The notes below the pieces were generated by a model that was given only the letters and a program-made list of their open reading frames with translations, did no database searches and was not told the DNA's origin. A program made the position numbers and the translations under genes. Below, piece after piece: positions 1-48,900 of a DNA stretch of 64,000 nucleotides. Origin of the DNA: Gracilinanus agilis (taxonomy: Eukaryota); contig NC_058136.1 in NCBI RefSeq assembly GCF_016433145.1, forward strand, positions 59,665,716 through 59,729,715, given 5' to 3'. Within the stretch, counting starts at the first letter, position 1. Every line of letters begins with the position of its first letter.

Positions 1-3000
1 AAAGGAAGGAAACACACAGACAGATGGGGACACACTGACAAAGGGACACACAGAAATATGTGGGACACACAGACAGATGTGGGACACACAGACAGAAAGG
101 GAGGGGACACACAGATAGAAAGAAGGGGACATACAGACAGATGTGGGACACACAGACAGATGTGGGACACACAGACAGAAAGGAAGAAGACATACAGACA
201 GATGTGGGAAACACAGACAGAAAGAAAAGGCACACACAGACAGATGGGGACACACTAACAAAGGGACACACAGAAATATGTGGGACACACAGAGAGATGT
301 GGGACACACAGACAGAAAGAAAAGGCACACACAGACAGATGGGGACACACTAACAAAGGGACACACAGACAGATGTGGGACACACAGACAGAAAGAAAAG
401 GGACACACAGACAGATGTGGGACACACAGACAGAATGAAAAAGCACACACAGACAGAAAGGAAGGAAACACACAGACAGATGGGGACACACTGACAAAGG
501 GACACACAGAAATATGTGGGACACACAGACAGAAAGAAAAGGGACACACAGACAGAAACAGAGGGAACACACAGACAGATGGGGACACACAGACATATGG
601 GGACACACAGATAGAAAGAAGGGGACATACAGACAGATGTGGGACACACAGACATAAAGAAAAGGGATACACAGACAGGAAGGAAGGAAACACACACAAA
701 TGGGGACACACTGACAATGGGACACACAGCCAGGAAAAAGGGACACACAGACAGATGTGGGATACACAGACAGAAAGAAAAGGCACACACAGAAAGGAAG
801 GAAACACCCAGACAGATGGGGACACACTGACAAAGGGACACACAGAAATATGTGGGACACACAGACAGATGTGGGACACACAGACAGATGTGGGACACAC
901 AGACAGAAAGAAAAGGGACACACAGACAGAAAGAAAAGGGACACACAGACAGATGGGGACACACAGATAGAAAGAAGGGGACATACAGACAGATGTGGGA
1001 CACACAGACAGAAAGGAAGAAGACATACAGACAGATGTGGGAAACACAGACAGAAAGGAAGAAGACATAGTCAGATGTGGAACACACAGACAGAAAGAAA
1101 AGGCACACACAGACAGAAAGGAAGGAAACCCACAGACAGATGGGGACACACTGACAAAGGGACACACAGAAATATGTTGGACACACAGAGAGATGTGGGA
1201 CGCACAGACAGAAAGGGAGGGAACACACAGACAGAAGGGGACACACAGACAGATGTGGGACACACAGACAGAAAGGAAGAAGACATAGACAGATGTGGGA
1301 AACACAGACAGAAAGGAAGAAGACATACAGTCAGATGTGGGACACACAGACAGAAAGGAAGGAAACACACAGACAGATGGGGACACACTGACAAAGGGAC
1401 ACACAGAAATATGTGGGACACACAGACAGATGGGGACACACTGACAAAGGGACACACAGAAATATGTGGGACACACAGACAGATGTGGGACACACAGAGA
1501 GATGTGGGACACACAGACAGAAAGGGAGGGAACACACAGACAGATGGGGACACACAGATAGAAAGAAGGGGACACACAGACAGAAAGGGAGGGAACACAC
1601 AGACAGATGGGGACACACAGATATATGGGGACACACAGACAGAAAAAAGGGACACACAGACAGATGTGGGATACACAGACAGAATGAAAAGGCACACACA
1701 GACCAAAAGGAAGGAAACACACAGACAGATGGGGACACACTGACAAAGGGACACAGAGAAATATGTGGGACACACAGACCGATGTGGGACACACAGATAG
1801 AAAGAAGGGGACATACAGACAGATGTGGGACACACAGACATAAAGTAAAGGGATACACAGACAGGAAGGAAGGAACCACATACACAAATGGGGACACACA
1901 GACAGAAAAAAGGGACACACAGACAGATGTGGGATATACAGACAGAATGAAAAGGCACACACAGACAGAAAGGAAGGAAACACACAGACAGATGGAGACA
2001 CACTGACAAAGGGACACACAGAAATATGTGGGACACACAGACAGATGTGGGACACAGAGACAGAAAGAAAAGGGACACACAGAGAGATGTGGGACACACA
2101 GACAGGAGACACATGGACATATGTGGGACACAGAGACAGAATGGAAGGAGACATACAGACATATGTGGGACACAGACATAAAGGAAAGGTACACACAGAC
2201 AGATGTGGGACACACAGACAGAAAGGAAGGGGACATACAGACAGATGTGGGACACACAGACAGAAAGGAAGGGGACATACAGACAGATGTGGGACACACA
2301 GACAGAAAGGAAGGGGACATACAGACAGATGTGGGACACACAGACAGAAAGGAAGGGGACATACAGACAGATGTGGGACACACAGACAGAAAGGAAGGGG
2401 ACATACAGACAGATGTGGGACACACAGACAGAAAGGAAGGGGACATACAGACAGATGTGGGACACACAGACAGAAAGAAAAGGGACATACAGACAGAAAG
2501 GGAGGAAACACACAGGCAGATGGGGACACACAGGCAGATGGGGACACACAGACAAAAAGGTAGGGGACATTCAGACAGATGTGGGACACACAGACAAAAA
2601 GGTAGGGGACATCCAGACAGATGTGGGACACACAGACAGTAACGAAGGAGACATAGAGACAGATGTGGGACACAGAAAGGAAGGAGATATACACACAGAT
2701 GTAGGACACACAGAGAAAGAAAAGGGACACACAGACAGATGGGGAGATCAGACAGATTTAGGACACACACAGAAAGGAAAGAAAGATACAAAGAGAGATG
2801 TGGACACATAGAAAAGGGACACACAGACAGATGTGGGACAAACAGGCAGATGGGGACACACAGACAAGACACAGACAGACAGATGTGGAATGCACAGACA
2901 GTAAAGTATGATACAGAGAGATGGGGACACAGAGACAAGGGAAACACAGACAGATGCGGGACAGACAGAGATAAAGGAAACGGACAGACAGATGTGGGAC

Positions 3001-6000
3001 ACACGGACAGGTGGGACACACAGAGAGAAAGGAGTGGGACACACAGACAGATGGGGGACACACAGCCAGAAAGAAAAGGGACACAAGACCGAAAGGAAAG
3101 GTAATTACTGGGAGTTGTGGTACACAGAGGCAGAAAAGGTACACACAGACAGAATGAAAGAGACATACAGAGTGAAGTGGGACACACAGACAGATGTGGG
3201 ACAAACAGGCAGAAAGAAAAGGGACACACAGACAGAAATGGAGGAAACACACAGACAGATGGGGACACACAGAAAAGGGACATACAGACAGATGGGGACA
3301 CACAAAAAAGGGACACACAGACAGATGTGGGACCCACAGACAGATGGGGACACACAGAAAAGGGACACACAGACAGATGTGAGACACAGACAGTAAAGAA
3401 GGAGACATACAGACAGATGTGGGACACACAGACAGAAATGAAGGAGACAGATGTGAGACACACAAACAGAAAGAAAAGGGACACACAGACAGAAATGGAG
3501 GAAACACACAGACAGATGGGGACACACATAGCAGAAAGGTATGTGACACACAGACAGATGGGGAGATCAGACAGATTTAGGACACACACAGAAAGGAAAG
3601 AAAGATGCAAAGAGATGCGGACACATAGAAAAGGGACACAAAGACAGATGTGGGACCCACAGACAGAAATGGAAGGAAGATACAGAGATGTGGGACACAC
3701 AGACAGAAAGAAAAGGGACACACAGACCGAAAGGAAAGGTAATTACAGAGAGTCATGGTACACAGAGGCAGAAAGAAAAGGTACACACAGACATAATGAA
3801 AGAGACATACAGAGTGAAGTGGGACACACAGATAGAAAGAAAAGGGACACACAGACAGAAAGGTAAGGGACATACAGACAGATGTGGGACACACGGACAG
3901 ATGGGGGCACACAGAAAAGGGACACACAGACAGATGTGTGACATACAGACAGAAAGGAAAGGGACATACAGACAGATGTGGGACACACAGACAGAAAGAA
4001 TAGGGACACACAGACAAGGGACACACGGACAGGTGAGGTCACATGGAATCAGGAAACACAGATGTGAGACCCAGAGACAGAAATTAAAGGAACATACAGA
4101 CACGTGGGCCACAGAGACAGAAAGAAAAGGGACACACAGACATATGGGGACACACAGACAAGAAACAGAGACAGATATGGGACACACAGACAGAAAGGAA
4201 GAGGACACACAAAGAGATGTTGTACGCACAGACAGAAACTTAAGGGAATTACAAAGAGTTGTGGTACACAAATACAGAAAGAAAAGGGACACACAGACAA
4301 AGGAAAGTGACATACATACAGAAATGGAACACACAGACAGAAAAAAGAGAGACACAGTGATAGATGTGGAACACACAGACAGAAAAGAAGGGACACACAG
4401 ACAGATGTGGGACACAGACTGAAAGGAAAGGGACACGCACACAAATGGGGACACACAGATAAGGGACACACAGACAGATGTGGGACACAGAGAGAAAAGG
4501 GATACACAGACAGATGTCAGACATACAGAGAGAAAGGAAAGGGACACATAGGCAGATGTCAGGTTCACATAGACAGATGAGGACACACAGACAAGGGACA
4601 CAAAGACAGATGTGGGACACACAGACAGATGTGGGACAGACAGAGATGAAGGAAAGGGACATACAGACAGATGTGGGACACGCGGACATATGGGGACAAA
4701 CAGAAAAGGGACAGACAGAGATGAAGGAAAGGGACACATGGACAGATGTGGGACACACAGACAGAAAAAAGGGACACACAGACAGATGGGGACACGCTGA
4801 CAAGGGACATACAGACAGATGTGGGATGCACATACTGACATGTGGGACACACAGACAGAAAGAAAAGGGACACACAGAGAAGGGACACACAGACAGATAG
4901 GAAGGGGACACACAGAAGGAAAGAAAAGGGACCAACAGACAGATAGGAAAGGGACACACAGACAGATGGAGTACACACAGCCAGAAAGAAAAAGGGACAT
5001 ACAGATGTGGAACATAGACAGAAAGGAAAGGGACATACAAACAGATGTAGGGCACACATATCGGGACACACAGAAAGGGGACACACAGTCAGAAAGGAAA
5101 GGGAAACACAGATGTGTGATACACAGACAAAAAGAGAAGGGACACACAGGCAGAAAGGAAAGAAAAACACAGACAGATGAGGCCACAGACAGATGTGGGA
5201 CACACAGACAGATGTGGGATACACAGACAGAAAGAAAAGGCACACACAGACAGATGGCGACACACAGACAGATGTGGGACACACGGAGAGAAAATTGATA
5301 TATGAAAAGACAAAGGACACATAGACACATGGGTGCACATAGAGAGATGAAGACAGAGACGGCGGATACACAGAAAGAAACAGAAGGACAGATAGGGGAC
5401 ACACACAGACAGAAGGCAACAACGAGATGAGGGACACAGACAGGAGAATCACCGGCAGATTGGGGACACACGGACTGACAGACAAGGGACACAAGACCAA
5501 TGGGGACACAAAGACAAATTGGTGAAAACAACCAAGGGACACACAGACTAATGGGGACACAGAGACAATGAACATTTACACAGACAGGGACACAAAGGGA
5601 GACGGGGAGAAAGACAAGAGACGCAGAGACAGATGTGGGATACACAGATGGAAAAGGGACACAGGGACAGATAGACACACAGAGACAAGGGACACACATA
5701 GAGATGTGGGGCACACAGACAGGAAAGGGACACACAGAGATATGAGGAAACACAGACAAGGGACACAAAGATAGATGAAGACACACAGATGGATGTGGGA
5801 CACAGAAATGAAAGGAATACAGATAGATGGGCACACACAGACAGAAAGTAAAGTGACACACAGACATATGGGGACACACGGAGAGAAAATGACACATGGA
5901 CAGACAAAGGACACAGATAAATGGGCATACAAAGAGAGATGGAGACAGAGAGATGGGGGATACATAGAAAGAGACAGAAGGACACACAGGGGACACACAG

Positions 6001-9000
6001 ACAGAAGAGTACACAGAGATGGGGAGAAACAGACTGACAAGGAACACAGAGAAAGATCTCAACCTGCTGACAGATGGGGGACACATAGACAAAGGACACC
6101 TAGACAGGGACACACAGACAGAGGGGAAAGTGACACATGGACTGACAAGGGACACAAAGACAGAGATACACAGACAAGGGACAGACAGGTGTGTGACACA
6201 GAAACAGAAAAGAAAGTGACACATTGACAGACATACAGGGTACACATGGACAGATGGGGACACACAGACAGAAATAAAAAGGACACAGACAGAAAGAAAG
6301 GGGACACAGAGAGAGACAGAGGGAACAGATGGACAGACAGACAGGACACATAGAGAGATGGGGACACACAGACAGAGAGACACGTGACAGACACAGAAAG
6401 AAAAGGGACACACAGACAGATGGGGACACACAGACATGGTACACACAGATGTGGGACATACGGAGAGAAAAGTGACACATGGACAGACAAAGGACACATG
6501 GACAGATGGGCAGACACAGAGAGGTGGAGACGGACAGAGATGGGGGATACACAGAGACAGAAGGACACACAGGGGACACACAGACAGAAGAGTACAAAGA
6601 GATGGGGGAGAGACAGACTGACAGGGGACACACAGAAAGATGGCGACCCGCTGACAGATGGGGGACACATAGACGGGGACACACAGAGGGGAAAGTGACA
6701 CACAGAGACAGGGGACACACAGACAAGGGACAAACAGATATGGGACACAGAAACAGAAAGAAAAGGGACACACTGACAGACCGACAGACAGGGGGATACA
6801 TAGACAGATGAGGACACATAGAAATAAAAGGAACACAAGGACAGAGAGATATGGGACACACAGAAGGAAAATGGACACACGGACAGGCAGACAGGGGACA
6901 CAAAGACAGATGTGAATACACAAAGGACACACAAACAGAAAGGAAAGTGACACACAGACATATGGGGACAAACAAGGGATACACAGAGATGTGGCACACA
7001 TGGTGAGAAGAGTGACACATGGACAGACAAAGCACACACAGATGTGGGACAAACAAAGAAAAGGGAAACACAGACAGATGGGGACACACAAGGGACACAC
7101 AGACAGAAAGGAAAGGGACACACAGACAGATGAGGACACACAAACAAGGGACACAGAGAGATGTGGGACACATGGAGGAAAATTGACACATGGACAGACA
7201 AAGGACACATACACAGATGGTTGCACACGGAGAGATGGAGACAGAAAGAGATGGGAGATACACAGATAGAAAGAGACAGAAGGACAGAAAGGGTATAGAC
7301 AGATAAACAGAAGGTGACAAAGACATGAGGGACACAGAGACAGGAGAAATACAGGCAGATGGGGGACACACAGATTGGCAGACGAGGGACACATAGAACG
7401 ATGGGGACACAGACAGATTGGGGACACACAAACAAGGGACATATAGACAGATGTGGGACACAGACACGAAAAAAGAGACACAAAGACAGTCGGGACACAG
7501 AGAAGGAACACAAAGATAGACGACGGATACACTGATGGAAATGGGACACACAGACAGACAGACGGGATCAAAAGATAGACGAGGACACACAGACATGGGA
7601 CACACAGACGGATATAGGACAGAGAAAGGAAAGGGATACACATATGGGAACACACAGAGAAGGAACACACAGACAAAGAGATGTGGGACACACGGAGAGA
7701 AGAGTGACACGTGGACAGACAAAGGGCACACAGACAGAAAGGAAAGGGGCACACAGAAAAGGGACACACAGACAGATGTGTGGACACAGGGAAGGAAAAA
7801 TGACACATGGAAAGCAAAGGACACATAGATGGGCAGACACAGAGAGGTGGAGACAGAGATGGGGGACACACAGATAGAGACAGAAGGACAGATGGGGACA
7901 CACAGACAGACAGGGACAAAGAGACAGTGGATACAAAGACAGGAGACACACAGATAGACTGACCAATAGGGGACACACAGATAGATGGCGACCCACTGAC
8001 AGATGGGATAAACATAGACAAGGGATGAACAGCAGACAGGGACACACAGAGGGGAAAGTGACACATGGACATACAGGGGACACAAAGACAGACAGGGACA
8101 TACCAACAGGCGACAGACAGATGAGGGACACAGAAATGGAAAGGGACACATTGACAGTCAGAGAGGGGACGCATAGAGAGATGGGGACACACAGACGGAA
8201 ATAAAAGGGACACAAGGACAGAGAGATATGGTACACATAGACAGAGAGATGTGGGGCACAGAGACAGAAAGAAAAGGGACACAAAGAATGATAGGGACAC
8301 ACAGAGAGAACAGGGAAGGAAAATAGACACATGGACAGCAAAGGACACATAGACAGATGGGTGGACACAGAGAGGTGGAGATGGACAGAGATAGGGAATA
8401 CACAGATAGAGACAGAAGGACAAACGGGGGACACACAGACAGACAGAAGAGGACAAAGAGACAGGGGACAGCCAGCCAGCCAGCCAGGCTGACAGGAGAA
8501 ACACAGATGGAGATCCGCTGACAGATGGGGGACAAAGACAACGGACGCATAGAAAAACAGGAACACACAGACAGAGAGAAAAGTGACACACGGACAGAGG
8601 GGACACACAGACAAGGGACAAACATGTGGGACACAGAAACAGAAAGAAAGGGACACTCAGACAGATGGAAACACAAAGATAGATGAGGACACAGACAAGC
8701 GATACACAGAAGAATGTGGGACACAGAAATGAAAGGGACACAGACAGATGGGGACACAGACAAGGGACACACAGACAGAGATATGTGGGACACATGGAGA
8801 GAAAAGTGACACATGGACAGACAAAATACACATAGACACACAAAGAGAGTTGGAGACAGAGAGGTGGGGGATACATAGAAAGAGACAGAAGGACAGTCAG
8901 CAGACACACAGACAGGCAGAAGGCTACAAAGACATGAGGAACAAGGAGACAGGAGACAGACAGACAGATGGGGAACACACAGAAAGACCAACAGGGGACA

Positions 9001-12000
9001 CACAGACACATGGCAACCCACTGACCAATGGGGGACACAAAGACAAGGGATGCATAGACAGACAGGGACACACAGACAGAGGGGAAAGTGACACACACAG
9101 ACAGACAAGGGGCACAAAGACAGACAGGGATGCACAGATGTGGGACACAGAAACAGAAAGATAAGGGACACACTGACAGAAGGTAAAGGGACACACAAAG
9201 AGACAGAGAGGACAGATAGATGGGATACATAGACAGGGACACACAGAGAGATGTGGGACACACAGACAAAAAGAAAGGGGACACAATACAGATGGGGACA
9301 CAGATACAAGGGACACATAGACATATGGGTAGACAAAGACCGAGAGATGTGGGAAACACGGAGAGAAAAATGATACATGGACAAAGGACACATAGACAGA
9401 TGGGCGCACACAGAGAGGTGGTGACAGACAGAGATGGGGATATACAGATAGGAAGAGACAGAAGGACAGACAGGGGACACACAGGCCAATACGGGATATA
9501 CACAGCCACATGGCAACCCACTGACAGATGGGGGACACATAGACAAGGGACACACAGACAAGGACACACAGAGGGGAAAGTGACACACAGACAGGGGACA
9601 CAAAGACAGATGGGGACACACAGACAAGGGACAGTCAGATGTGGGCCACACGAACAGAAAGGAAAGGGACACATTGACAGACAAACAGTGGACACATAGA
9701 CAGATGGCAATACACAGACAGAAATAAAAGGGATACACGGGCAGAGAGATACGGGACAAACAGACCAAAGGAAAAGGGACACACAGAGGGGACAGACAGA
9801 CATATGGAACACATAGATAGATGGAGACACACAGGCAGAGAGATGTGGGACACAGAGAAAGAAAGAAAAGGGACACACAGACAGATAGATGGAACACATA
9901 GACGGAGACACAGACAGAGATGTGGGACACAGAGACAGAAAAAAGGGACACAGAGACAGATGTGGGACACAGAAAAGGGACACACAGAGAGATGTGGAGA
10001 CACGGAAGGAAAAATGACACATGGAAATCAAAGGACACATAGATGGGCAGACACGGAGGTGGAGACAGAGATGGGGGAATACACAGATAGAGAGAAGGAG
10101 AGACAGGGGACACACAGAAGAGGACAAAGAGACGGGGAACAGACAGACTGATGGGACATATAGTGAGACGGTGATAGATAGGGGATGCACAGACAAGGAA
10201 TGCATAGACAGGCAGAGACACTAGACAGAGGGGAAAGTGAAACGTGGACAGACAGGGCACACAAAGACAGAAGGGGACACATAGACAAGGGACAGATAGA
10301 TGTGGGACACAGAAACAGAAACGTGACACATTGACAGACATAGAGGGGACACATAGGCAAGTGGGGACAGATAGAAATTAAAGGGGCACACGGACAGAGA
10401 GATATGGGGCACACAGACAGAAGGAAAAAGGACACACGGATAGACAGACAGGGGACACAAAGACAGATGGGAATACACAGACAAGGGACACACAGAAAGG
10501 AAAGGGACACACAGAAAAGGGACACAGAGACAGAGAAATGTGGGATGCATGGAGAGAAGAGTGGCACATGGACAGAAAAATGACACACAGACAGATGTGG
10601 GACACAGAGAGAAATGATGTGGATACACAGACGTGAGACACAAAGAAGGGAAAGGGACACACAGAGAGATGTTGGACATGCAGAGAGAAGAGTGACACAT
10701 GGACAGAAAAATGACACACAGACAGATGTGGGACACAGACAGATGTGGATACACAGACGTGAGACACAAAGACAGAAGGGAAAGGGACACACAGAAAGTA
10801 AAGGAACACACAGACAGATGGGGACACATAGGCAGAGAGATGTGGGACACATGGAGATAAAAGTGACACATGGACAGACAAAGGACACATAGACAGATGG
10901 CCGCACACAGAGAGGTGGAGACAGACTGAGATGAGGGATACACCGAAAGAGACAGAAGGACAGAAAGGGGAGAGACAGAAAGAAGGGGACAGACAGGAGA
11001 AACACAGGCAGATGTGGGACACATAGACTGATGGGCACATACAGACAGATTGGGGACACACAAACAAGGGACACAGACAGAAAAAAGGGACACACAGACC
11101 AATGAAGACACAGAGACAATGAACACTTACACAGACAGGGACACAAAGATAGATAAGGACACACAGAGGGATGTGAGACACAGGAAGGAAAGGGGCACAA
11201 AGACAGATGGGGACACACAGAGAAGGGAAACACAGAGATGTGGGACACAAAGAGAGAAAACTGACACATGGACAAAGGACGCATAGACAGATGAGCGCAC
11301 ACAGAGAGATGGAGACAGACTGAGATGGGAGATACACAAATAAAAAAGAGAGAAGGACAGACAGAAAGAGACACAGAAACAGGAAGAAAAGGGACACATT
11401 GACAGACAGGGGACACATAGACAGATGGGATCACACAGACAGAAATAAAAGGGTCACAGAGTGATATGGGACACCCAGAAGGAATAGGGATACATAGACA
11501 GAGGGGACAGACAGAAAGATGGGACACATAGATGAGGACACACAGAGTTGGGACACAGAGATGGAAAGAAAAGAGAAACACAGATTGGGGAAACAAAGAA
11601 AAGGGACACAGATGGGGACACACAGACAAGAGACGCATAGACAGACAGGGACACAGATGGTGAGACAGACAAGGGACCCAAAGACAGATATGGGACACAC
11701 AGATGGATAAGAGACACATGGACAGACAGACTGGAGACACTAAGAAGGGGCACACAGACGTGGGACACATAGAAAGGAAGGGGACACAGACACATGGGGA
11801 CACAAATACAAGGGACACACAGAGACATGTGGCACACATGGTGAGAAAAGTGACTCATGGACAAAGGACACATAGACAGATGGGCGCACACAGAGAGTTG
11901 TTGACTGACAGAGATGGGGATACACATATAGAAAGAGAGAGAAGGACAGACAGGGGACACAGACAGAAGGGAACAATGAGATGGTCACAAAGACAGACAG

Positions 12001-15000
12001 ATGGGGACACACAGACAGATGGAAATCCACTGACAGATGGGGGACACATAGACAAGGGATATATAGACAGACAGGGATGCACAGACATAGAGGAAAGTGA
12101 CATGGAAACAGACAGGGGACACAAAGACAGATGGGTACACACAGACTGAAATAAAAGGAACACATGGACAGAGAGATATGGGAAACACAGACAGAAGGAA
12201 AAGGGACACACAGACATAGGGGACAAATGGACAGAGAGGACACATAGACGGGGATACACAGAGAGATGTGGGACACAGACAGAAAGAAAAAGGAAACAGA
12301 GATGTGGGGCACACGGAGAAAAAAGTTACACATGGACAAAGGCTCATGGGTGTACACAGAGAGGTGGAGACAAAGAGATGGGCGATACACAGAAAGAGAC
12401 AGAACAGACGGGATACACAGACAGAAGGTGACAAAGTCATGAGAGACACAGAGACAGCAGAAACATCAGTAGATGGGGACACATTGATAGACAAATAACA
12501 GAGACAAACGGGGACACAGACTAGGGGTACACAAACAAGGGACACATAGATGTGGGACACACAGACAGAAAAAAGGGACAGACAGATGGAAGGAGACAAA
12601 AAGACGGGGGACACAGAGACAGGAGACACAGATAGATGGGAGACATACAGACAGCAGACTGACAGGGGACACGCAAACAGATGGTGGACACAGACAAGGG
12701 ATGCATAGACGGAAACACAGAGGGAAAAGTGACACATGGACAGACAGAGGACACATAGACAGAGCTGTGAGACAGACACACAGACAAATAAAAGGGACAA
12801 ACAGACTGGGGACACCCACAATGAACACATACAAAGACAGGGACACAAAGGCAGACGGTGACAGACAAGGGACATAAAGACAGATGTGGGACACAGAAAG
12901 AAAAGGGACACACAGACAGATGGGGGCACACAGACAAAGGACACATAGAAAGAAAAGGGAGACAGGTTGGGACAGACAAAGGACACATAGATTGGCGCAC
13001 ACTGAGAGGTGGAGACAGAAGTGTGAGAAACAAGGATAGAAAGAGACAGGACAGATAGTGAACACACAGACAGGGACAACGAGACGGGGGACACACAGAA
13101 AAAGAGGGAACACCTAGACAGATGGAGACCCACAGACAGATGGGGGACACACAGACAAGGGAAACACAGATGACAGGGACACACAGACAGGGGATACAAA
13201 AACAGACAGGGACACACAGACAAGAGATACACAGACAGAAATAAAAGGGACACATGGACAGAGATATATAGGACACAGAGAGAAGGAAAAGGGACACACA
13301 CATAGACAGAGGGGTCAGACAGACGGGACACATAGACGGAGATAGAGAGATGTGGGACACAGACAGAAGGAAAAGAGAAACAGATTGGGGACACAGACGG
13401 AAAGGAAAGGGACACACGTACAGACAGAGGGGTCAGACTGACAGATGGGAACACAGACAGATGGGGACACACAGACAGGAAAGGGACACACAGATGGGGA
13501 CACAGAGACAAGGGACACAAGACAGATGTGGGACAGAGAGACAAAAAAGAAAGGGACACACAGATAAGGGACACAGAGAGATGCGGGACACAAGGAAGGA
13601 AAAGTGACACATTGACAATGGACTCAGACAGATGGGCTCACAGAGAAATGGAGACAGAGATGGGAGATACACAGATAAAAAGAGACAGAAGGACAGATAG
13701 GGGACACACAGACAGAAGGGGGCAAAGAGATGGGGGACACAAAGACAGACAAGGACACACAGACAAGGGACAGACAGATGTGGGACACAGAAACAGAAAG
13801 AAAAGAGACACATTGACAGACAAGGGACAGATAGATGGGGACACACAGACAAGGGACAGATAGATGGGGACACACAGACAAGGGATGCATAGACAGACAG
13901 GGATACACAGACATACAGGGGACACAAAGGCATACTGGGACACAGACAAGGGACAGAGTTGTGGGACACAGAAACAGAAAGAAAAGGGACACACAGACAG
14001 ATGACACACAATGAACACATACATAAACAGTGACACGAAGACAGACGGGGAGACAGACAGGGAACACAAAGACAGATGGGGACTCACAGAGAAGGGACAC
14101 AGAGACAGAAAGGAAAGAGACAAAAAGATGGGGACACACGGACAGAAATAAAAGGGACACAGAGAGATGTGGGACACATGGAGAGAAAAGTGATACATGG
14201 ACGAAGGACACATAGACAGATGGGCGCACACAGAGAGGTGGAGACAGAGATGGGGGATGCACAGATAGAGACAGGAGGACAGAAAGGGGACACACAGGAG
14301 ACAGACGGGGGACACAGACGGAAACACAAAGACAGATGTGGGACACATGGACAGAGAGACAGGAGACACATAGATGGGGATACACAAAGAGAAAAGTGAC
14401 GCATGCACAGACGGGGACATATAGACTGATGGGGACACAGAAGTGACACACGGACAGATGGGATACATAAACATGGAACAGAGAGATGTGGGACACACAG
14501 AACACATAGAGGAGGATACACAGACAGAAGGGGACACACAGATGGAAAGAGACAGGACAGACATGGGGACAGACAGGACATGTAGACAGATGGGGGACGT
14601 CCGGATGGAGACAGGACAGGGGACAGAGATGGGGACACATACAGAAAAGAGACACACAGCTGGAAAGAGTCAGAGACAGAGAAAAATGACAAACGGACAG
14701 ACGAGGACACACCGAGAGATGTGGAACACACGGACAGAGGACACATTGGCAGAGGGGGATACACAGACAGATGTGGCACGTGGATAGATAGGGGACACAT
14801 GAGAGGGAAACAGGACAGAGACGGGACACATGGATGGGCCGGAGGCAGGATGACAGACAAGGGACATAGACAGGACAGCCAGGCAGCACACAGAAACATG
14901 AGAGACATTCGGACATTGGACTCCAGGGCAGACGAGGATCGGAGGGATAGACAAAGGGCACAGAGACAGATGGGGACATATGGAGAGGCAACGGAAAGAC
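1..15000. repeat. Large complex tandem array (GACA/ACAC/GGGACAC-rich, T-poor on +), extends beyond window start
   Basis: Recurrent words acagacagatgtgggacacac and gaaaggaagggg throughout. A near-perfect 42-bp unit runs at ~2195-2490 (ORF track shows RQMWDTQTERKGTY about 7 times). A ~600-bp super-unit starts at ~5300. Confidence 0.97.
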
Positions 15001-17810: not shown

Positions 17811-19534
17811 GCCCAGAGAGGATAATTGGATCAGGATCTGGTGTGGCCCTAAAATATCAAAAGGGAAATAACTTCAAGCAAGACCCTGATCTACTCTAGA
17901 TCTCAGTGCTCATTAGTAGAATTAGTGGGTCAGACTAGAAAACCTCTAAGGACTCTTCCCCAACTTTAGAATCCTATGAGTCTATGGATAGTGACCCACA
18001 ATCCTCTATTCTCTTCCCACATCCTTAATTCCCTCATTAGTCATTCCTTTGGGTTATAATTCACTTGTTGCCCCTGAGGAAAAAGAAAACAATCCCATGA
18101 TCAGACAGTCACTAGAACATGGCAGACCTATGGCCCAAAGAGCACTCTCTGTGGTCGCATGGCAGCCCTGCCCCCACTGAGTTCATGTTGATTACTAGAA
18201 AGGCTGAAGGACTCAGGCGGAGCATTTTACTGGGCTGGACTGAGACCCCCAAACTAGGGGCCTTATACCAAGATGCAGTGATAGAGGCTAAATAGAGGCA
18301 GACAAAGGGCTGTCAGGGGAACCTTGGCTAGGCGGGTGGGAGGTAGAAAGGAGAATCCTTTGAGTTAGAGGTATCAGAGAAAGCTGTATAATAGAAATGA
18401 GCCTGGAGGTCAGCCTGGAAGAAAAGGAGGAGGGAACACATCTCAGACATGGAGGCTGCTCTGAGCCAGTACATAAAGATGGAAGAAGTACCAGGCCCTG
18501 GTGTTGTGTCAGTTATCCCAGGCGTTAGAACAAGAGTGGCATGACCCCCCTGGGCTTCAGGAGTAGCGTTTCAGTCTCTGGGCATCTGGGAGAAAAGAGA
18601 GAGTGAGAGTGGAGGCAGAGACCAAGGAAGAAGCTGTTGAGTAGTCCAGGTGAGAGGTCATAGGGTCTGGCCTCACAGCAGAAAACTGGATTGTGAGTCT
18701 GCATCTGTCTCATTCTTTACCATTAAAAGATGCCCAGCAACTCGGAGAGCTAGACAATGAATTAATTTACAGCTAAAGCCATTAGACAGAATGAGAACAT
18801 AAGCGCACTGGCCTCTCTCTTTCTTGTTCTGCCCCCAGCTTCCCCCCCCCCCCAGAGATTCAGACCCAGATCTGCTGGAAACTAGGAGAATTCTGGGAGC
18901 TGGCAGATGGGACCTATGGGGAGAAACCCACACTGTCAGGCCTGCCATGGGCCTGGAAACAATGCCCTTCCTGGAACCTAGTACAAAGATAATTAGATAC
19001 AAGGGATTGTTCTGGTGAACAAAGAATAAAGGCTGGGAGTAGTACAAGCACTAGGGGAAATGCCTTTCACCGAAGGGTGAGCCTTTAAGCATTGAAGATA
19101 AGGGACCTGTGAGGTAAAGAGAGACCTGGGGGACAAAGCCACACCCCTCCCAGGCTCCGTTGGCTACAGAGAATTGTGAATTGGTACTGATGGGCAGTCC
19201 GGCTAGAAAACAGTCCTGGAAGCCAAACGGAGAAGGGCCTCAAAAGCTAGGCTAAGGGGTAGCCATGTTGTCTTGGAAGCAACAGGGAGCCCTTGAAGGT
19301 TGCTGAATACTGCTCTGCCATGGGAAAGCTCTCTCAGATACTATTAGATGCTTATTGGGCCTACATGTAACCAGGACCCCTAAACTGAGGGTGCCAAGGG
19401 CCAACAAATGATGCTCCTTTGGCAAAGCTTCATCAAAGGGTGTTTCCAGTCTTCAAATGAGCCCTACTCTACTCTGGGTGGTGTCACTTTAGGGGAGATG
19501 AAAAATGTCATAGGGCAGGAATGGCATTCCTATT

Positions 19535-26089: not shown

Positions 26090-27130
26090 GGAGGCAGAAG
26101 ATGTACATTCAAATCCCATCTCCTTTTCTTTTAACAACTCTTGTGATTTCTGGAAAAGGTACAGAACTGTCTTGGGGCCTTAGTTTCTTTCTTTGAGAAA
26201 TAAAAGGCTCATACTAGAAGACCTCTGAGGTCCCCTCTTGCTCTAAATCCACAATTCAAGAGAACAGATTGCAAGTGTGTGGCCTGTTGGAAAGGGAATT
26301 CAACGTGTTGTCAGGGAGAACAGGAAATGAACTGAACATTTTGTCAAAAGATGGCTTAGTCCTGAGGAGAGGGGATTTTGACCAAAAAGGATGGGAGAGA
26401 GCCTCGCCGAAGCCTTATTTGGTGGTGTTGCCTTTACCTTGTGTGCTCTTAAAAAGCCTGCCAGCTGCAGCCCAGGCGCCTAAGTAATGACTCAAGTTAG
26501 TTGGATCTCGCTTTATAAACTCTCAACTCTCCAAGGTTTTTTCCTAACCGAGACCCTCCCCAGGTTTAAACCCCCTTCCTTGCCAAGAGAGCCTTAGTTC
26601 TCCCTTAGCCAAGTCTCCCCATGCCCATAGCTACTCCTTTGTCCCCTCAGATCCTAAGGGCCCTGTGGTAGACTACCACATCTGAACCAGAGCTGGCACT
26701 TTCCCACCCAGATGTTGACCTCTTCTTCTTTTCCCTGCCATCTCTCTCTAGAATGACAGGCTTGGGGTCCAGAGTTCTCCCACCTAGCTCTCTAGCAGCT
26801 CAGGGCAGCTGGCTAACTTGGAGCTTTGCTGGCAGCTGGGCACTGGGACCTTGTGTTTTCAGATGGTTTGGACAAGAGGACAGACACAGACCTGTGGAAT
26901 TCAGGGTCCATTGGTGCTGTTTCCCACTCAGGGGACTGAGATGTTCAGGGATTCAGTCCCTGCTTATTCTCTTCTCCCCTCAGTCACTGGGAAGGAAGCA
27001 AATGGTCACTAGGGAACAGCAGTGAGGCCGGGCAGCTCTGGGCCATGAGCGTGGGGCTCCCCCAAATGATATAAGCATTGAATTCACTTGAATCGCTCTA
27101 ATCAGAGTTACCAAAAGCCCTGTAACTATG
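26090..27130 (+). repeat. Paralogous unit C (includes MIR remnant)
   Basis: MIR plus flank at 26090-26300 matches 28050-28270; 26640-26790 matches 19900-20060; the core at 26860-26904 matches A, B and D. Confidence 0.8.
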
Positions 27131-27260
27131 GTAATCTTTCCCCCTGCTCATCCCCAACAACTGCACAAAGTGTGACCCAGTCCTCATCTCCCCCCATAAC
27201 TATCCACTATCACTTCATACGTTCCTCTAAGGCAGTGATGGCGAACCTATGGCACGGGTG

Positions 27261-27480
27261 TGTGTAGGTGGAAATTTGATGCCCCTGAGCTGCATTACCC
27301 AGAGTCCTTTTGAGTTGTATCCTCACCTGGCATCCTGCTCGCTTCAGCAGCACATGATACTAAAATTGGAATGATACAGAGAAGATTAGCATGGCCCCTG
27401 CGCAAGGATGCCAGGTGAGGACACAACTCAAAAGGACTCCGGGCAGTGCAGCTCAGGGGCATCAAATTTCCACCTACACA
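27261..27480. repeat. 75-bp inverted repeats (27261-27335 and 27406-27480) flanking the U6 fragment
   Basis: Manual alignment gives 71/75 identity, and all four differences are transitions. Confidence 0.95.
27336..27410 (+). pseudogene. RNU6: 3'-truncated U6 snRNA copy (about U6 nt 2-76)
   Basis: tgctcgcttcagcagcacatgatactaaaattggaatgatacagagaagattagcatggcccctgcgcaaggatg matches vertebrate U6 apart from 2 CpG-type transitions and a 1-nt insertion. It lacks the U6 3' end and upstream PSE/TATA. Confidence 0.95.
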
Positions 27481-28049
27481 TGTGCCAAAGATGGCATGCA
27501 GAACACTCTCTGTGGGCATGTGGCCACCCTCCCCCAGAGTTCATTACTAGAAAGACAGAGGGACTCGGGGTGAGCCACTCCCCTCCCCCTCTCCATGCAC
27601 CTGCGACATTTTTTTCACATCCTCTATCCAGCAGCCCAATGAGAGCACTTTCTCCCTCCTCCATGTTGATTAAGGAGGAATGGTGTGAGACACACTTGGC
27701 ACTTGGTGGGGGGGGGAGCGGCATGGCATGGCACATGGTCTGGGGAGGGAGTGGAGGCAGGCCCCGGCACTCCATCTCTAAAAGTTTCACCATCACTGCT
27801 AAGGTCTAGCCAGACTGCTCTCCCTACTGGTAGTTTCCTGACTGTACAATGTGGTTTTCCCATCTCTGGTTTTTTGTCTATGTTGCTCTTTCCATCAGGA
27901 GTTCCTGAACCTCCTGGGCAGCAAAACTCAATCCTAACCAGATTATAGTAGGCATTCTAGAGTCTGTTAATGACTGGCTGCCCACAGTATGACAGTTAGA
28001 GGCCCTAGAAACCTGACATTCTAGAGTGTTAAAGTACAAAGAGAGATGG

Positions 28050-33399: not shown

Positions 33400-33899
33400 N
33401 NNNNNNNNNNNNNNNNNNNNNNNNNNNNNNNNNNNNNNNNNNNNNNNNNNNNNNNNNNNNNNNNNNNNNNNNNNNNNNNNNNNNNNNNNNNNNNNNNNNN
33501 NNNNNNNNNNNNNNNNNNNNNNNNNNNNNNNNNNNNNNNNNNNNNNNNNNNNNNNNNNNNNNNNNNNNNNNNNNNNNNNNNNNNNNNNNNNNNNNNNNNN
33601 NNNNNNNNNNNNNNNNNNNNNNNNNNNNNNNNNNNNNNNNNNNNNNNNNNNNNNNNNNNNNNNNNNNNNNNNNNNNNNNNNNNNNNNNNNNNNNNNNNNN
33701 NNNNNNNNNNNNNNNNNNNNNNNNNNNNNNNNNNNNNNNNNNNNNNNNNNNNNNNNNNNNNNNNNNNNNNNNNNNNNNNNNNNNNNNNNNNNNNNNNNNN
33801 NNNNNNNNNNNNNNNNNNNNNNNNNNNNNNNNNNNNNNNNNNNNNNNNNNNNNNNNNNNNNNNNNNNNNNNNNNNNNNNNNNNNNNNNNNNNNNNNNNN
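33400..33899. other. Assembly gap (500 N)
   Basis: Run of N. Confidence 1.
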
Positions 33900-35480
33900 C
33901 AGCTCCCCATCCCTTTTTACCCCAGCTTTCCTTCTGTTTTTCTCTCCATTTTACCTCAGTTTTCCTTCTTTCTCTACATTTTTGCCTCAGCTTTTCTTTT
34001 CCCAACTTTTACCTCAACTCCCTTTTTTGTCTCACTTTTATCTAGCTTTCTTTCTGTTGTTCTCTCCATTTTTACCTCAGCTTGTCTCCCTCCACTTTTA
34101 CCTCAGCTCCCCATCTTTTTTCACCCTACCTTTACCTTAACTTTCCTTTCCATTTTTACCTCAGCTTCTCTTCCCCTCACTTTTACCTCAGTTCCTCACC
34201 TTTTTGAATCCCACTTTTACCCTCAGCTTTCCTTCCATCTTTCCATTTTTGCCTTAGCTTCTTCCCAACCCCCAAAATATATCGATGTGAAAGATGACTC
34301 CAACAGTTCTTTCTCTGGAAGTGGATAGCATTCCCTGTCATAAGTTTCATCCCATTTTTTTAACCTCTACATTTTTCTCAGCTCTCTCTTTTCACCTCAG
34401 TTTTACCTCTGCTTCCCTTTTCACCCTAATTTTACCTCAGCTCCCCTTCTATCTTTCACTCCATTTTCACTTCATTTCCCCTTTTCTCCCCAATTTTACC
34501 TCAGCTCCCCTTTCCTTGATTCTCATTTTTTACCTGAGGTCTCTTTGTTTTCCCCTAATTTTTACCTCATCTCTCCTTCTTTTACTCCATTTTTACCTCA
34601 GCTTCTCTTCCTTCTAGTTTTACCTCAGAGCCCCTTCTTTTCTTATCCCACTTTTACCTCAGTCTCACTTCTATCTTTTCATTGTTTATGTCAGTTTTTC
34701 TTATTCTTTCCACCCTACTTTACCTCATCTTCCTTTTTCTTCACTCCATTTTCTCCTCAACTTCCCTTCTCCATACCCCATTCTTACCTCAGCTCCCATT
34801 TCACCCCACTTTTACCTCAACTTTCCTTCTATCTTTCACCCCATTTTACCTCAGCTCTCCCTTCTTTTTACCTTAACTCACATTTTCACCATATTTTTAC
34901 CTCATTTCCACTTCTTTTCTTTACCATACTTTTATAAAACTCAGTTTCTCTTCACCGCACTCTTACCTCTGCTCTCCTTTGTCTTGTCACCACACTTTTA
35001 TCTCAGCCCCTCTTCCTTCACTCCACTTTTACCTGATCTCTTCTCTTTATTTTACTTCAGTTCCTCTGCTTTTCTTCACTCCATTTTTTCCTGTTTCCCA
35101 TTCTTATTTCACCTTATTTTTATCTCAGCTTCCCTTTTATCTTTCCTCCCAATTTTAACCTCAGCCTTCCATCTTTTTATCTTTCTTTACCTCAGCTCTC
35201 CTTCTCTTCACCTCATTTTTACTTCACCTTGCTCTCTGTACCACATTTTTACCTGATCTCCCTTTCTTTTCTTCACCCTATGTTTACCTCAGTTCCCTTT
35301 TTTCCTCTTTATCCCCCTTTTACCTCAGTTTCTTTTTTCCTCACTCCATTTTAATCTCAACTCTCCTTCTGTTTGCCCTATTTTACCTCAACTCCCCTTC
35401 TTTACACCATTTTAAATTCAGCTCCTTTTTTCTTCTTCCCATTTTAAACCAAGATCACTTTCTTTTTACTTCAGATCCCC
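33900..35480. repeat. Pyrimidine-rich degenerate tandem array, motif TTTTACCTCAGCT every ~25-35 bp
   Basis: About 40 copies by eye. Starts at the gap edge and contains a short L1 3'UTR-like insert at ~34270-34345. Confidence 0.92.
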
Positions 35481-45900: not shown

Positions 45901-48900
45901 ATGTCTCTGTTCAAAAATGCAGAATCAAATAGAAAATCCTCTGTTTGGCCCCTTCTAGTCTTGCCAGTCTTCTCTTGCCATGTGCTCCCTTTCACATACT
46001 TTGTGACCTAGTCACACTGGCCTTCTAGATGGGCCTCCTCCAACTTGGAGCATTTTCTCTGCTTGTCTCACATGCTGAGATTTTTCTCCTTCTTCATCTT
46101 TGCCTCCTGGCTTCCTTCAACTCACAGCTGAAGTCCCACCTTCTGCAGGAAGCCTCCTCTTCTCCTTCTTGACCTTGGTGTCTTTCCTCTAAGAGCATCT
46201 CTAGTATCCCGTCTGATCTTGCTTTTTGTACACGGTTGTTTGCATGTTGTCTTCTCCATTAGAAGGTGGACTCTTCGAGAGCACTGACCATGTTTGTGCC
46301 TTTCTTCTTATCCCCATTCTTGGCATGGGAACTAGCACAAAGTATGTTCCTGAACATGTCAACTAACATTTATTATCAGCTCTGAGTTTTCTTTTTGTCT
46401 CTCCCACTGGAACAGATGGATCTTGGCTATGCCTCCAACTGTAGTTTTGGCAAAGAGGAGAGAATGATCTCTCAATCTTCTCTTTTCAGAAATAACTGAG
46501 GATAGCCCAGAGCCAAAGAGGCTGGTATGTGGAAGTTTCCATTGTTGGTCTACTTCAACCTAGCCTACACTGGCACAGTTGGGCAGGGGCTTGGGGCCTT
46601 GGGCTTCTTTGGTTTCACGGGTCCTTTAGTGGAGATATCTTGCCTTGGAAATTATATTTTCATAAAGTGTCATCCCCTGCTCTCCTACCATTTGATATTC
46701 TATACATACCATGTTCTAAATATAAAAGTGTCCCTTTCCCATGAAGACCTGGGCCAAAGATCCAAGGACCCTTTCAGGTCACCTGGATCCAGGAAGGAAG
46801 AGGGAGGAGGTGGTAGCTATGTGATGTGTCTGCTCTTTGGTCATGAAAGATCTATTCACCTTTGTTCTTCTTAATCATCAGGAGACCTTCCCAGTCTCAA
46901 ACTACATGGTCAAGCAGCATGATATCAGCAAGGATATGAGAGCCATCCTGGTGGACTGGATGGTGGAGGTGCAGGTGAGTCTGGCAGCTTCTGGCAGGGA
47001 TACTTGTGGTAAGATGAAGTTTCAAAGAGAGCAGCCACATGGAGAGTTGTTCCTCTGTGTCCATCTTAGGAGGAACAGGTGAGTAGCAGGACTGGCCCAT
47101 TCCTGTTATATCTATATTCTCTCCTATACCCTATAAAACCTATCCTCAGCAGCTTCCTTTAAAGGGTCCCTTCTTCACAAAAATGTCAGATTGGAGATTT
47201 ATGGGATGACTCCAAGAAGATTTACAGTTCAGTAGGAAAGGACGTTTGGGGGCCTGGGTCTTTCTCAAGCTCCTGAAATCTATCTCTTCCACTCAGTGAG
47301 CTTTGTGTAGGGAAGGTAGCATGGTGGTTTGATAGATTTAAAGAATAACCCATTATTTCAGTGAAAGTTTCTGCTTTCTCATAAATTCTCATTTGATCTT
47401 AGACAATTCTGAAGTAGAGAACATAGTAGTTATCGCCATTATGGATTACAAAATTAAGACTTAAAGACTGACTTGCCCAAGGTCATACAGAAAAAGACAG
47501 AACTGAGATTACCTGGGTCTTTTGATAACCACAGTGATATATGCTTCCTTGACTCTGTAAAATGTCTTCTTCAGATTATTCCTCTAGTGCTATCTTTCTC
47601 TGTTGCCTCATTGTGGCACAAAGATGACCCTGAGTTCTTAAGTCTATGGCAGATCTTCTCAAGCTGGGCCCATTGACAGACCATCCAGTTTCCCAAGAAC
47701 TAGCCTAAATTCAGAGAGGCTTATTACTAGATTGGTTGTAGGATAACAGGTTTTTGGCCATAGCAATTCTTTTGTGGTGTAGAGAACAAGTTCTACCTTT
47801 GGGGGACTTAAAATCTAATTAGAGATAAGTAAGGAACAGAAAAATTAAATAACAAGGCGACCTGAAATTGTGGAATTGGGGTGGGTATGTGTGTGGAGTC
47901 CTTGTGGCCTGGGGTGATTGGACAAGCTTTATTGAAGAGGCAAGACTGAAGGAGAAAGAACAGCCTCAATAGAAGTGTAATAATGTGGCCTGCCGGAATC
48001 CTGGCTGTAAACTTTGGTCATGGTCACGTTTCCATCCATGATGTAATTGCCTGGTCCAACCACAGAAGCTGGCAAGCTTCAGGGCGAAGGAATGGAAGTT
48101 GGACTGGGTCCCTGCAGGGAGCCTCCTGGGGAAAGGGCTGCCTGTTTCTGCTCATTTTCTCAGGTTTTGTCTCAATGCTTTTCTATTAAAGAACTGTAGG
48201 TCTGCCTTATTTCTAACTTGTAGCCCTGCCCTCTGGGTCTTCTCGGTCATATACCTCGAGTGTGTGTATGCCAACTGATAGCATAACCCTAAAGCCACTG
48301 GAAGCCAAGAGAAACGTTTTTTGGCTTTGATATGGGACGTTCTTTCTCTTTTCTCAGGAGAACTTTGAGTTGACCCACGAGACTCTGTATTTGGCAGTGA
48401 AGTTGGTGGATCACTACTTAATGCATGTGGTGTGCATGAGGGACAAGTTACAACTGATTGGATCCACTGCTATCCTGATTGCATCTAAATTTGAGGTGAG
48501 TCCCTGGGTCTGACCCTAGAACTTTGTGAGAAGCAATCATCTATCTGAACAGGAGGAGGGAGGCCTGAATGCCTTCTCTAACCCCACCAAACTTCGTATC
48601 CGCCTTGCCCAGGCAGAGAGCCTAATGCTGAACTGCTCTAACAGAGTAGAACACAATTGGGATTTTAGCCATTTCCTGGGCATCCCCAACATCCTCCCTT
48701 TAAAGCTCCCTTCTAGGGGGTGTTGTGGGGGTGGGGGCTTTGTATGAACAATAGGATGTTGTAGTAGCCAATGCAGGCTAGCTGCCATCTCATGTCTGTT
48801 CCCACATAGGACATCAGGGAGCTTTACTAGGATCAGGGGAAATACTCAAGACTTTTCTCTCTTTGCCTCTTGTTAACAGGGATTTGAAATAATATAGCAT

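What the first reader, a model, noticed from the sequence alone, without database searches (positions are those of the whole stretch)
27261..27480. U6 fragment enclosed by 75-bp inverted repeats, inserted into a hAT transposon
Seen: a 220-bp cassette, revcomp(X)-U6(2-76)-X, with 71/75 arm identity. The arms include the last 5 nt of the U6 piece (GGATG/CATCC). It splits the hAT 5' end (atggcacgggtg | tgtgccaaag, with an apparent 3-4-bp duplication). Established: U6 chimeric retrocopies form by L1 template switching, but normally as U6 fused to a downstream partner, not as a palindrome. Inference 1: the cDNA of a U6-X chimera snapped back and copied itself, giving a direct signature of fold-back synthesis. 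Inference 2: it is a MITE with long TIRs carrying U6 as cargo, which would be a new mobile family if multi-copy. If transcribed within the CCNB3 intron it would form a 75-bp dsRNA stem (Dicer/ADAR substrate) presenting the U6 ACAGAGA box in its loop.
Basis: partly seen in the sequence, partly recalled or inferred. Interest (0 to 1): 0.72.

Follow-up and report, generated by a model that had tools for sequence, protein, structure and literature searches.

The report
Palindromic U6-containing insertion in opossum transposon
A 220-base patch inside an old opossum transposon relic carries a piece of U6 spliceosomal RNA between two mirror-image 76-base arms; it is most likely a one-off scar left when a polymerase folded back and copied its own product while a DNA break was patched, and I could not test whether other copies exist in the genome.

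Summary
Arms 27261-27336 and 27405-27480 are 76 nt and 72/76 complementary. They enclose U6 nt 2-75 (Rfam U6, 64.7 bits). The cassette splits a roughly 350-bp hAT-like MITE at a small internal palindrome.

It has no poly(A), no T-rich L1 nick site and only 2-4 bp of ambiguous duplication, so it is not a canonical L1 insertion. The four arm mismatches are all transitions. The arms' per-lineage divergence (2.7%) equals the U6 piece's divergence from consensus (2.7%). That fits one event and argues against an assembly artefact.

The innermost 6 bp of the palindrome are native U6 nt 70-75 paired with their complement just before U6 nt 2. I read this as the snap-back priming site.

Best reading (about 0.5): a single fold-back synthesis event at a break. 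Whether the polymerase was a reverse transcriptase or a repair enzyme is unknown. Rivals are a later replication template switch, a multi-copy foldback element, and an artefact.

Arm X has no other copy in the window, the viral contigs or the metagenome contigs, and no Rfam identity. No function is shown.

The parts
27227..27232 (.). Left copy of the 6-bp direct repeat CTAAGG that abuts the host element
   Evidence: Read. The same hexamer follows the right terminus at 27799-27804. A hAT element would be expected to have 8 bp.
27233..27260 (+). Left end of the host hAT-like MITE: CAGTG terminus plus the left half of a small subterminal palindrome (GGCAC..GTGCC)
   Evidence: 17-nt terminal inverted repeat I3. 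A second diverged fragment of the same family lies at 18110-18225.
27261..27336 (+). Left arm: reverse complement of X, plus the complement of U6 nt 70-75 (CATCCT) at its inner end
   Evidence: It carries T, A, A, A at the four mismatch sites, one of them a decayed CpG.
27336..27410 (+). U6 snRNA fragment, nt 2-75, sense on the + strand. It forms the loop and the innermost stem. It differs from the consensus by two CpG transitions and one inserted G.
   Evidence: Rfam RF00026, 64.7 bits
27405..27480 (+). Right arm: U6 nt 70-75 followed by X, about 70 nt of unknown origin beginning CCAG/GTGAGG
   Evidence: X has no Rfam family, no other copy in the window, and no match in viral or metagenome contigs.
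27481..27798 (+). Remainder of the host hAT-like MITE, ending in the CACTG terminus
   Evidence: positions 20-95 of this part match 18139-18223 at 74%
27799..27804 (.). Right copy of the 6-bp direct repeat CTAAGG
   Evidence: Read

Best explanation
This is a single, non-canonical insertion made by fold-back (snap-back) synthesis while a break inside an old hAT-like MITE was being patched. A nascent strand contained a U6 copy joined to an unrelated ~70-nt sequence. It folded back on itself at a short complementarity: CATCCT at 27331-27336 pairs with AGGATG (U6 nt 70-75) at 27405-27410. A polymerase then copied the strand's own 5' part to its end, giving arm-U6-arm in one step. The product was joined to the broken ends through 2-4 bp of microhomology.

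Two versions fit equally well. (a) A cDNA of a chimeric U6(1-75)-X RNA reached the U6 5' end and then copied itself. (b) A U6-sense strand carrying an upstream partner stalled at U6 nt 75 and self-primed on the 6-bp match.

Shown: the anatomy, the junctions, the absence of L1 hallmarks, and the equal divergence of the arms and the U6 piece. Inferred: the break, the snap-back, and which polymerase acted (LINE reverse transcriptase or a repair polymerase). No function is implied. If the + strand is transcribed with the cyclin gene, the RNA would form a very stable 76-bp stem.
For: The palindrome is real and far beyond chance. Its inner edge coincides with native U6 nt 70-75 paired to their complement directly 5' of U6 nt 2, as expected for a microhomology-primed fold-back.

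There is no poly(A), no T-rich nick site, and only a TG/GTG/TGTG overlap at the outer junctions. This is the signature reported for break-repair patches: class 2 templated insertions (PMC5110952) and RT-product-mediated repair with 1-5 bp microhomologies (PMC4516963).

The arm-arm distance is 0.055, or 0.027 per arm. The U6 piece is 0.027 from the consensus. That is consistent with the arms and the U6 copy being the same age.

The required enzymology exists. L1 ORF2p extends hairpins, copies DNA templates and jumps templates (PMC10830420). 3'-truncated U6 junctions with 1-3 nt microhomology are template-switch products (PMC6789731).

The arm sequence is not seen elsewhere in the 64-kb window.
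Against: It is a single case with no pre-insertion allele, so a one-step origin cannot be separated from a two-step one. The source of X is unknown. Genome copy number was not measurable with the tools left. The equal-age argument rests on 4 and 2 substitutions only. Any junction will show 0-2 nt of microhomology by chance, and a 5-6 nt match is easy to find somewhere along a ~150-nt strand. Read-level support could not be obtained.
Confidence: 0.5

Rival explanations
1. Two steps. First an ordinary chimeric or 3'-truncated U6 insertion (U6-X) entered the MITE. Later a replication template-switch mutation copied 76 nt (X plus GGATG) in reverse complement to the other side of U6.
For: Template-switch mutations create perfect inverted repeats in one event, with lengths up to about 83 nt reported (PMC10710096). 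The anatomy is compatible with this.
Against: It needs two rare events at one spot. The arms and the U6 piece show the same divergence, so the second event would have had to follow quickly. The new arm would have to land exactly between the MITE flank and U6 nt 2 without disturbing either.
Confidence: 0.15
2. The cassette is one copy of a multi-copy foldback element: a MITE with 76-bp terminal inverted repeats that carries a U6 fragment as its loop.
For: It has long terminal inverted repeats and a compact 220-bp size. Earlier notes say this genome is rich in palindromic hAT MITEs (untested lead).
Against: The flanks show only TG, GTG or TGTG. There is no TA, TTAA, TWA or 8-bp duplication, and the termini (TGTGTAGG...) are not of the hAT YARNG type. 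No second copy or fragment of X occurs in the 64-kb window or in viral or metagenome contigs. The window search would detect only families of roughly 10^5 copies or more, so this is weak evidence.
Confidence: 0.15
3. It is an assembly or library artefact: a chimeric read or clone that produced a false inversion.
For: Only one low-coverage run holds about half of the sampled words, and it may be the source sample.
Against: Artefactual inverted duplications have identical arms. Here the arms differ at 4 of 76 sites, all transitions, one at a CpG. The U6 piece shows matching CpG decay. The flanks continue the same MITE correctly on both sides.
Confidence: 0.05
4. It is a canonical L1-mediated (or RTE-mediated) U6 chimera rearranged by twin priming.
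For: U6/LINE chimeras and inverted snRNA/L1 chimeras attributed to twin priming are known. Opossum has U6 copies next to RTE elements (PMC4476161).
Against: There is no poly(A), no long target duplication and no TTTT/A site. Twin priming inverts a different part of the RNA and does not duplicate the same 76 nt in both orientations. X is not recognisable as a LINE tail in the window.
Confidence: 0.05

Closest known systems
U6/LINE-1 chimeric retropseudogenes (Group IV of Doucet et al. 2015, PMC4476161; RtcB ligation model, PMC6789731)
   Same: A 5'-complete U6 copy is fused at its 3' side to an unrelated sequence, and short microhomology is possible at the fusion point.
   Different: Here U6 stops at nt 75 instead of running to the U-tract. 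The partner is not an identifiable LINE. There is no poly(A), no 7-20 bp target duplication and no TTTT/A site. The partner is present twice, in inverted orientation.
Class 2 templated sequence insertions and RT-product-mediated break repair (PMC5110952; PMC4516963)
   Same: A short foreign patch, at least partly RNA-derived, sits at a site with no poly(A), no real target duplication and 1-5 bp junction microhomology.
   Different: No palindromic patch is mentioned in the passages of those two papers that I searched (word search for 'inverted': 0 hits). The break itself is inferred here, not observed.
Replication template-switch mutations that create hairpins (PMC5453318; PMC10710096)
   Same: They create a near-perfect inverted repeat of tens of bases around a spacer in one step.
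   Different: Those events copy neighbouring resident sequence. Here both arms and the spacer are foreign to the site, so the fold-back more likely happened on the incoming strand.
L1 twin priming (5' inversions) and inverted snRNA/L1 chimeras (PMC4476161)
   Same: Two priming events give segments in opposite orientation within one insertion.
   Different: Twin priming inverts a different segment and keeps the poly(A) and target duplication. It does not give the same 76 nt in both orientations.
Foldback MITEs
   Same: Long terminal inverted repeats around a short loop, about 220 bp in all.
   Different: There is no canonical target duplication or terminal motif, no second copy was found, and the loop is a cellular snRNA fragment.

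Membership tests
U6/LINE chimeric retropseudogene | U6 copy complete at its 5' end | tested here: met
   The Rfam alignment starts at model position 1. U6 nt 2 is at 27336.
U6/LINE chimeric retropseudogene | U6 runs to its 3' U-tract and is joined to a 5'-truncated LINE or mRNA | tested here: not met
   U6 homology ends at model position 76 of 105, human nt 75-78. The partner X matches nothing in the window or in Rfam. No repeat library was on hand.
U6/LINE chimeric retropseudogene | 3' poly(A), 7-20 bp target-site duplication and a TTTT/A-type target | tested here: not met
   The flanks read ...CACGGGTG | cassette | TGTGCCAAAG. There is no A or T tract and only a 2-4 bp overlap.
Class 2 templated insertion / break-repair patch | No poly(A), no TSD of 5 bp or more, junctions with microhomology or small additions | tested here: met
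   Criteria taken from PMC5110952.
Class 2 templated insertion / break-repair patch | Donor sequence identifiable elsewhere, and an empty pre-insertion allele | not testable with these tools
   U6 is identified as one donor.
Foldback MITE (new mobile family) | Terminal inverted repeats | tested here: met
   76-nt arms, 95% complementary
Foldback MITE (new mobile family) | Target-site duplication of a length typical of a DNA-transposon superfamily | tested here: not met
   Only TG, GTG or TGTG, and this cannot be separated from the arm ends.
Foldback MITE (new mobile family) | Multiple dispersed copies with different flanks | not testable with these tools
   None in the 64-kb window, none in viral or metagenome contigs, and the host genome could not be searched.
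Replication template-switch mutation | The ancestral sequence at the same site lacks the inverted copy | not testable with these tools
   No orthologous sequences were available.
hAT MITE (the host element) | Short terminal inverted repeats beginning with YARNG | tested here: met
   CAGTG...CACTG termini within the 17-nt repeat I3
hAT MITE (the host element) | 8-bp target-site duplication | tested here: inconclusive
   Only a 6-bp repeat, CTAAGG, abuts both termini.
hAT MITE (the host element) | Repeated family | tested here: met
   A second diverged fragment lies at 18110-18225, 74% identity over 85 nt, E 2e-8.

The most novel reading that the evidence does not exclude
The cassette is a copy, or the founder, of an undescribed foldback element that carries a U6 fragment. 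Alternatively, as an intronic 76-bp hairpin of the cyclin B3-type gene, it is processed into small RNAs or heavily A-to-I edited, which would make it a newly born hairpin RNA locus made in one step from a snap-back insertion.
Probability: 0.1. Interest if true: 0.6.

Novelty: new variant of a known kind. Interest (0 to 1): 0.35.

Why it matters
If the one-step reading is right, this is a clean germline fossil of snap-back synthesis on an snRNA-containing strand. That activity has been shown for L1 ORF2p in vitro (hairpin priming, DNA-templated synthesis, template jumping) and inferred for repair polymerases, but it is rarely readable so plainly in a genome. It would also be another route by which a long perfect hairpin can appear at once inside a gene's intron. 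As it stands it is a single neutral-looking scar with no evidence of function.

Tried and rejected
- **Read evidence.** There is therefore no read support, no depth and no empty-site evidence. The whole-cassette fold was done locally in a script.
- **Source of arm X.** The window blastn at word size 7 found only the two arms. An Rfam E-value scan of 27414-27560 gave only chance hits, E 3.8 and 7.7. Exact-pattern scans of viral contigs and metagenome contigs gave nothing.
- **Earlier notes of this scan.** There was no look-alike by sequence and no other U6 palindrome noted.
- **Paralogous empty site.** The only other copy of the host MITE (18110-18225) is deleted across the insertion point.
- **A genuine U6 gene with its upstream flank as the source.** Rejected by eye: there is no TATA-like box near -30 and no convincing PSE near -55 in the left arm.
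- **A hairpin-opening (P-nucleotide-like) origin from hAT excision.** Rejected, because the palindrome has a 68-nt non-palindromic centre.
- **ADAR or deaminase editing as the cause of the arm mismatches.** Not supported. All four being transitions has P about 0.2. Three of the four falling within 7 nt has P about 0.056. The changes are of mixed strand sense.
- **The 5' splice-site-like CAG/GTGAGG at the start of X.** Noted, but it is a post-hoc pattern and nothing rests on it.

Full report
**What is there.** The sequence at 27261-27480 is as described. The repeat finder reports a single strong inverted repeat, arms 27261-27336 and 27405-27480, 76 nt, 95% complementary, with 68 nt between them. 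My position-by-position check gives 72/76. The mismatches are at 27295, 27297, 27301 and 27319, and the pairing stops abruptly at both the outer and the inner edges. Sub-patterns of the arms (28 and 32 nt, up to 3 mismatches allowed) occur only at the two arms, with none expected in shuffles.

Between the arms, and running into them, Rfam finds U6 snRNA at 27335-27413: 64.7 bits against a gathering score of 44, E 4.8e-14, model positions 1-76 of 105. In human U6 numbering (my own count of the textbook sequence) this is nt 2-75. It differs from the consensus by two CpG transitions and one inserted G. The last three aligned letters (CCA against ACA) may be 2 nt of junction microhomology.

The innermost 6 bp of the palindrome are CATCCT (27331-27336) paired with AGGATG (27405-27410). 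The second of these is native U6 nt 70-75. So the arms are X (about 70 nt of unknown origin) plus the end of the U6 piece.

**Host site.** The cassette sits in an element bounded by a 17-nt inverted repeat (27232-27248 and 27783-27799). That element has CAGTG...CACTG termini and a 6-bp direct repeat, CTAAGG, abutting both ends. A second, diverged fragment of the same family lies at 18110-18225, 74% identical over 85 nt. Calling it a hAT-type MITE is reasonable, but the expected 8-bp duplication is not intact.

The insertion point is inside a small subterminal palindrome (GGCAC..GTGCC). The flanks read ...CACGGGTG | cassette | TGTGCCAAAG. Only TG, GTG or TGTG can be read as a duplication or overlap, and this cannot be separated from the TGTG...CACA arm ends. 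There is no A or T tract and no TTTT/A-like site. The other family copy is deleted across this point, so it gives no paralogous 'empty site'.

The host family copies differ by about 26%, while the cassette's arms differ by 5%. The insertion therefore looks much younger than the MITE. This is an inference from small numbers.

**Setting.** Earlier notes of this scan call the genome an opossum and place a cyclin B3 promoter near 16-20 kb (a lead only). I confirmed a B-type cyclin box (MRAILVDW) on the + strand at about 46.9 kb, and Pfam Cyclin_N matches the 85-aa stretch translated from 46825-47079 at E 1e-7. The cassette is therefore probably intronic on the sense strand.

A local fold gives -153.4 kcal/mol for the + strand RNA and -167.1 for the - strand, against -57.7 +/- 4.7 for shuffles. 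The stem survives in 1 kb of context. No RNA run was listed for this stretch, so expression and processing are untested.

The internal evidence argues against an artefact. The arms differ at four sites, all transitions, one of them a CpG kept in the right arm and decayed in the left. The U6 piece has two CpG decays. The arm-arm distance is 0.055, or 0.027 per arm, and the U6 piece is 0.027 from the consensus. A false inversion made in a library or an assembler would have identical arms.

**Mechanism.** The insertion lacks every hallmark of canonical LINE-1 target-primed insertion. U6 is cut at nt 75, whereas standard U6/L1 chimeras contain full-length U6 joined through its 3' end (PMC4476161; PMC6789731). 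The features match break-repair patches instead. Class 2 templated insertions have no poly(A), no duplication of 5 bp or more, and junction microhomology (PMC5110952). Captured RT products at breaks show 1-5 bp microhomologies (PMC4516963).

The palindrome is most simply explained by a strand that folded back and served as its own template. The outer edge of the palindrome would be that strand's 5' end. The inner edge would be the priming site.

Two versions fit.
- (a) A cDNA of a chimeric U6(1-75)-X RNA ran to the U6 5' end and then jumped, with 1 nt of overlap, onto itself.
- (b) A U6-sense strand with an upstream partner stalled at nt 75 and self-primed on the 6-bp CATCCT/AGGATG match. This would explain both the 'truncation' point and the inclusion of the U6 end in the arms.

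The activities needed have been shown for L1 ORF2p: hairpin priming with 4-7 bp of pairing, DNA-templated synthesis and template jumping (PMC10830420). 3'-truncated U6 junctions with 1-3 nt microhomology are regarded as template-switch products (PMC6789731). A repair polymerase copying a U6 pseudogene locus would give the same product, and I cannot tell the two apart. The equal divergence of arms and U6 piece favours one event, but it rests on only 4 and 2 substitutions.

**Rivals.**
- A two-step origin: a U6-X insertion followed by a replication template switch, which can copy up to about 83 nt in inverted orientation (PMC10710096). It cannot be excluded without orthologues.
- A multi-copy foldback element. 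This is the reading that would make the finding important. The ends fit no known target-duplication pattern, and no second copy of X appears in the window, viral contigs, metagenome contigs or the scan's own notes. These searches have little power, because the window alone would reveal only families of the order of 10^5 copies. The host genome, Dfam and Repbase were not searchable here.
- Twin priming does not produce the same segment in both orientations.

**What X is.** X remains unidentified. It has no Rfam family. It does not look like a U6 gene upstream region. It begins with a splice-donor-like CAG/GTGAGG, which I record but do not lean on.

**Verdict.** It is best read as a one-off snap-back insertion scar containing a 3'-shortened U6 copy: an unusual variant of known U6 chimera and break-patch events, with no evidence of mobility or function.

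Noticed in passing
window 1-15000: A long stretch with extreme strand asymmetry (AT skew about 0.7, GC skew 0.2-0.3).
   Followed up: no
window 46825-47079 (+): A stop-free stretch containing a B-type cyclin box (MRAILVDW). Pfam Cyclin_N matches at E 1.1e-7, residues 10-52. This fixes the cyclin gene on the + strand, downstream of the cassette.
   Followed up: partly
window 18110-18225: A second, diverged and internally deleted fragment of the same hAT-like MITE family that hosts the cassette.
   Followed up: partly
window 33400-34400 (approx.): A block of 1001 N (assembly gap or masked stretch). It is flanked by low-complexity, pyrimidine-rich sequence at 34-36 kb with GC skew -0.52.
   Followed up: no
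window 27295-27301: Three of the four arm mismatches fall within 7 nt (P about 0.056 by simulation), and all four are GC-to-AT in the left arm relative to the right. This is suggestive of local deamination or editing but is not significant.
   Followed up: partly
Sequencing-run output: Ten runs of two other coded organisms hold about 4% of the sampled words of 26900-27900. That is more than the short part of the U6 piece identical to canonical U6 should give.
   Followed up: no
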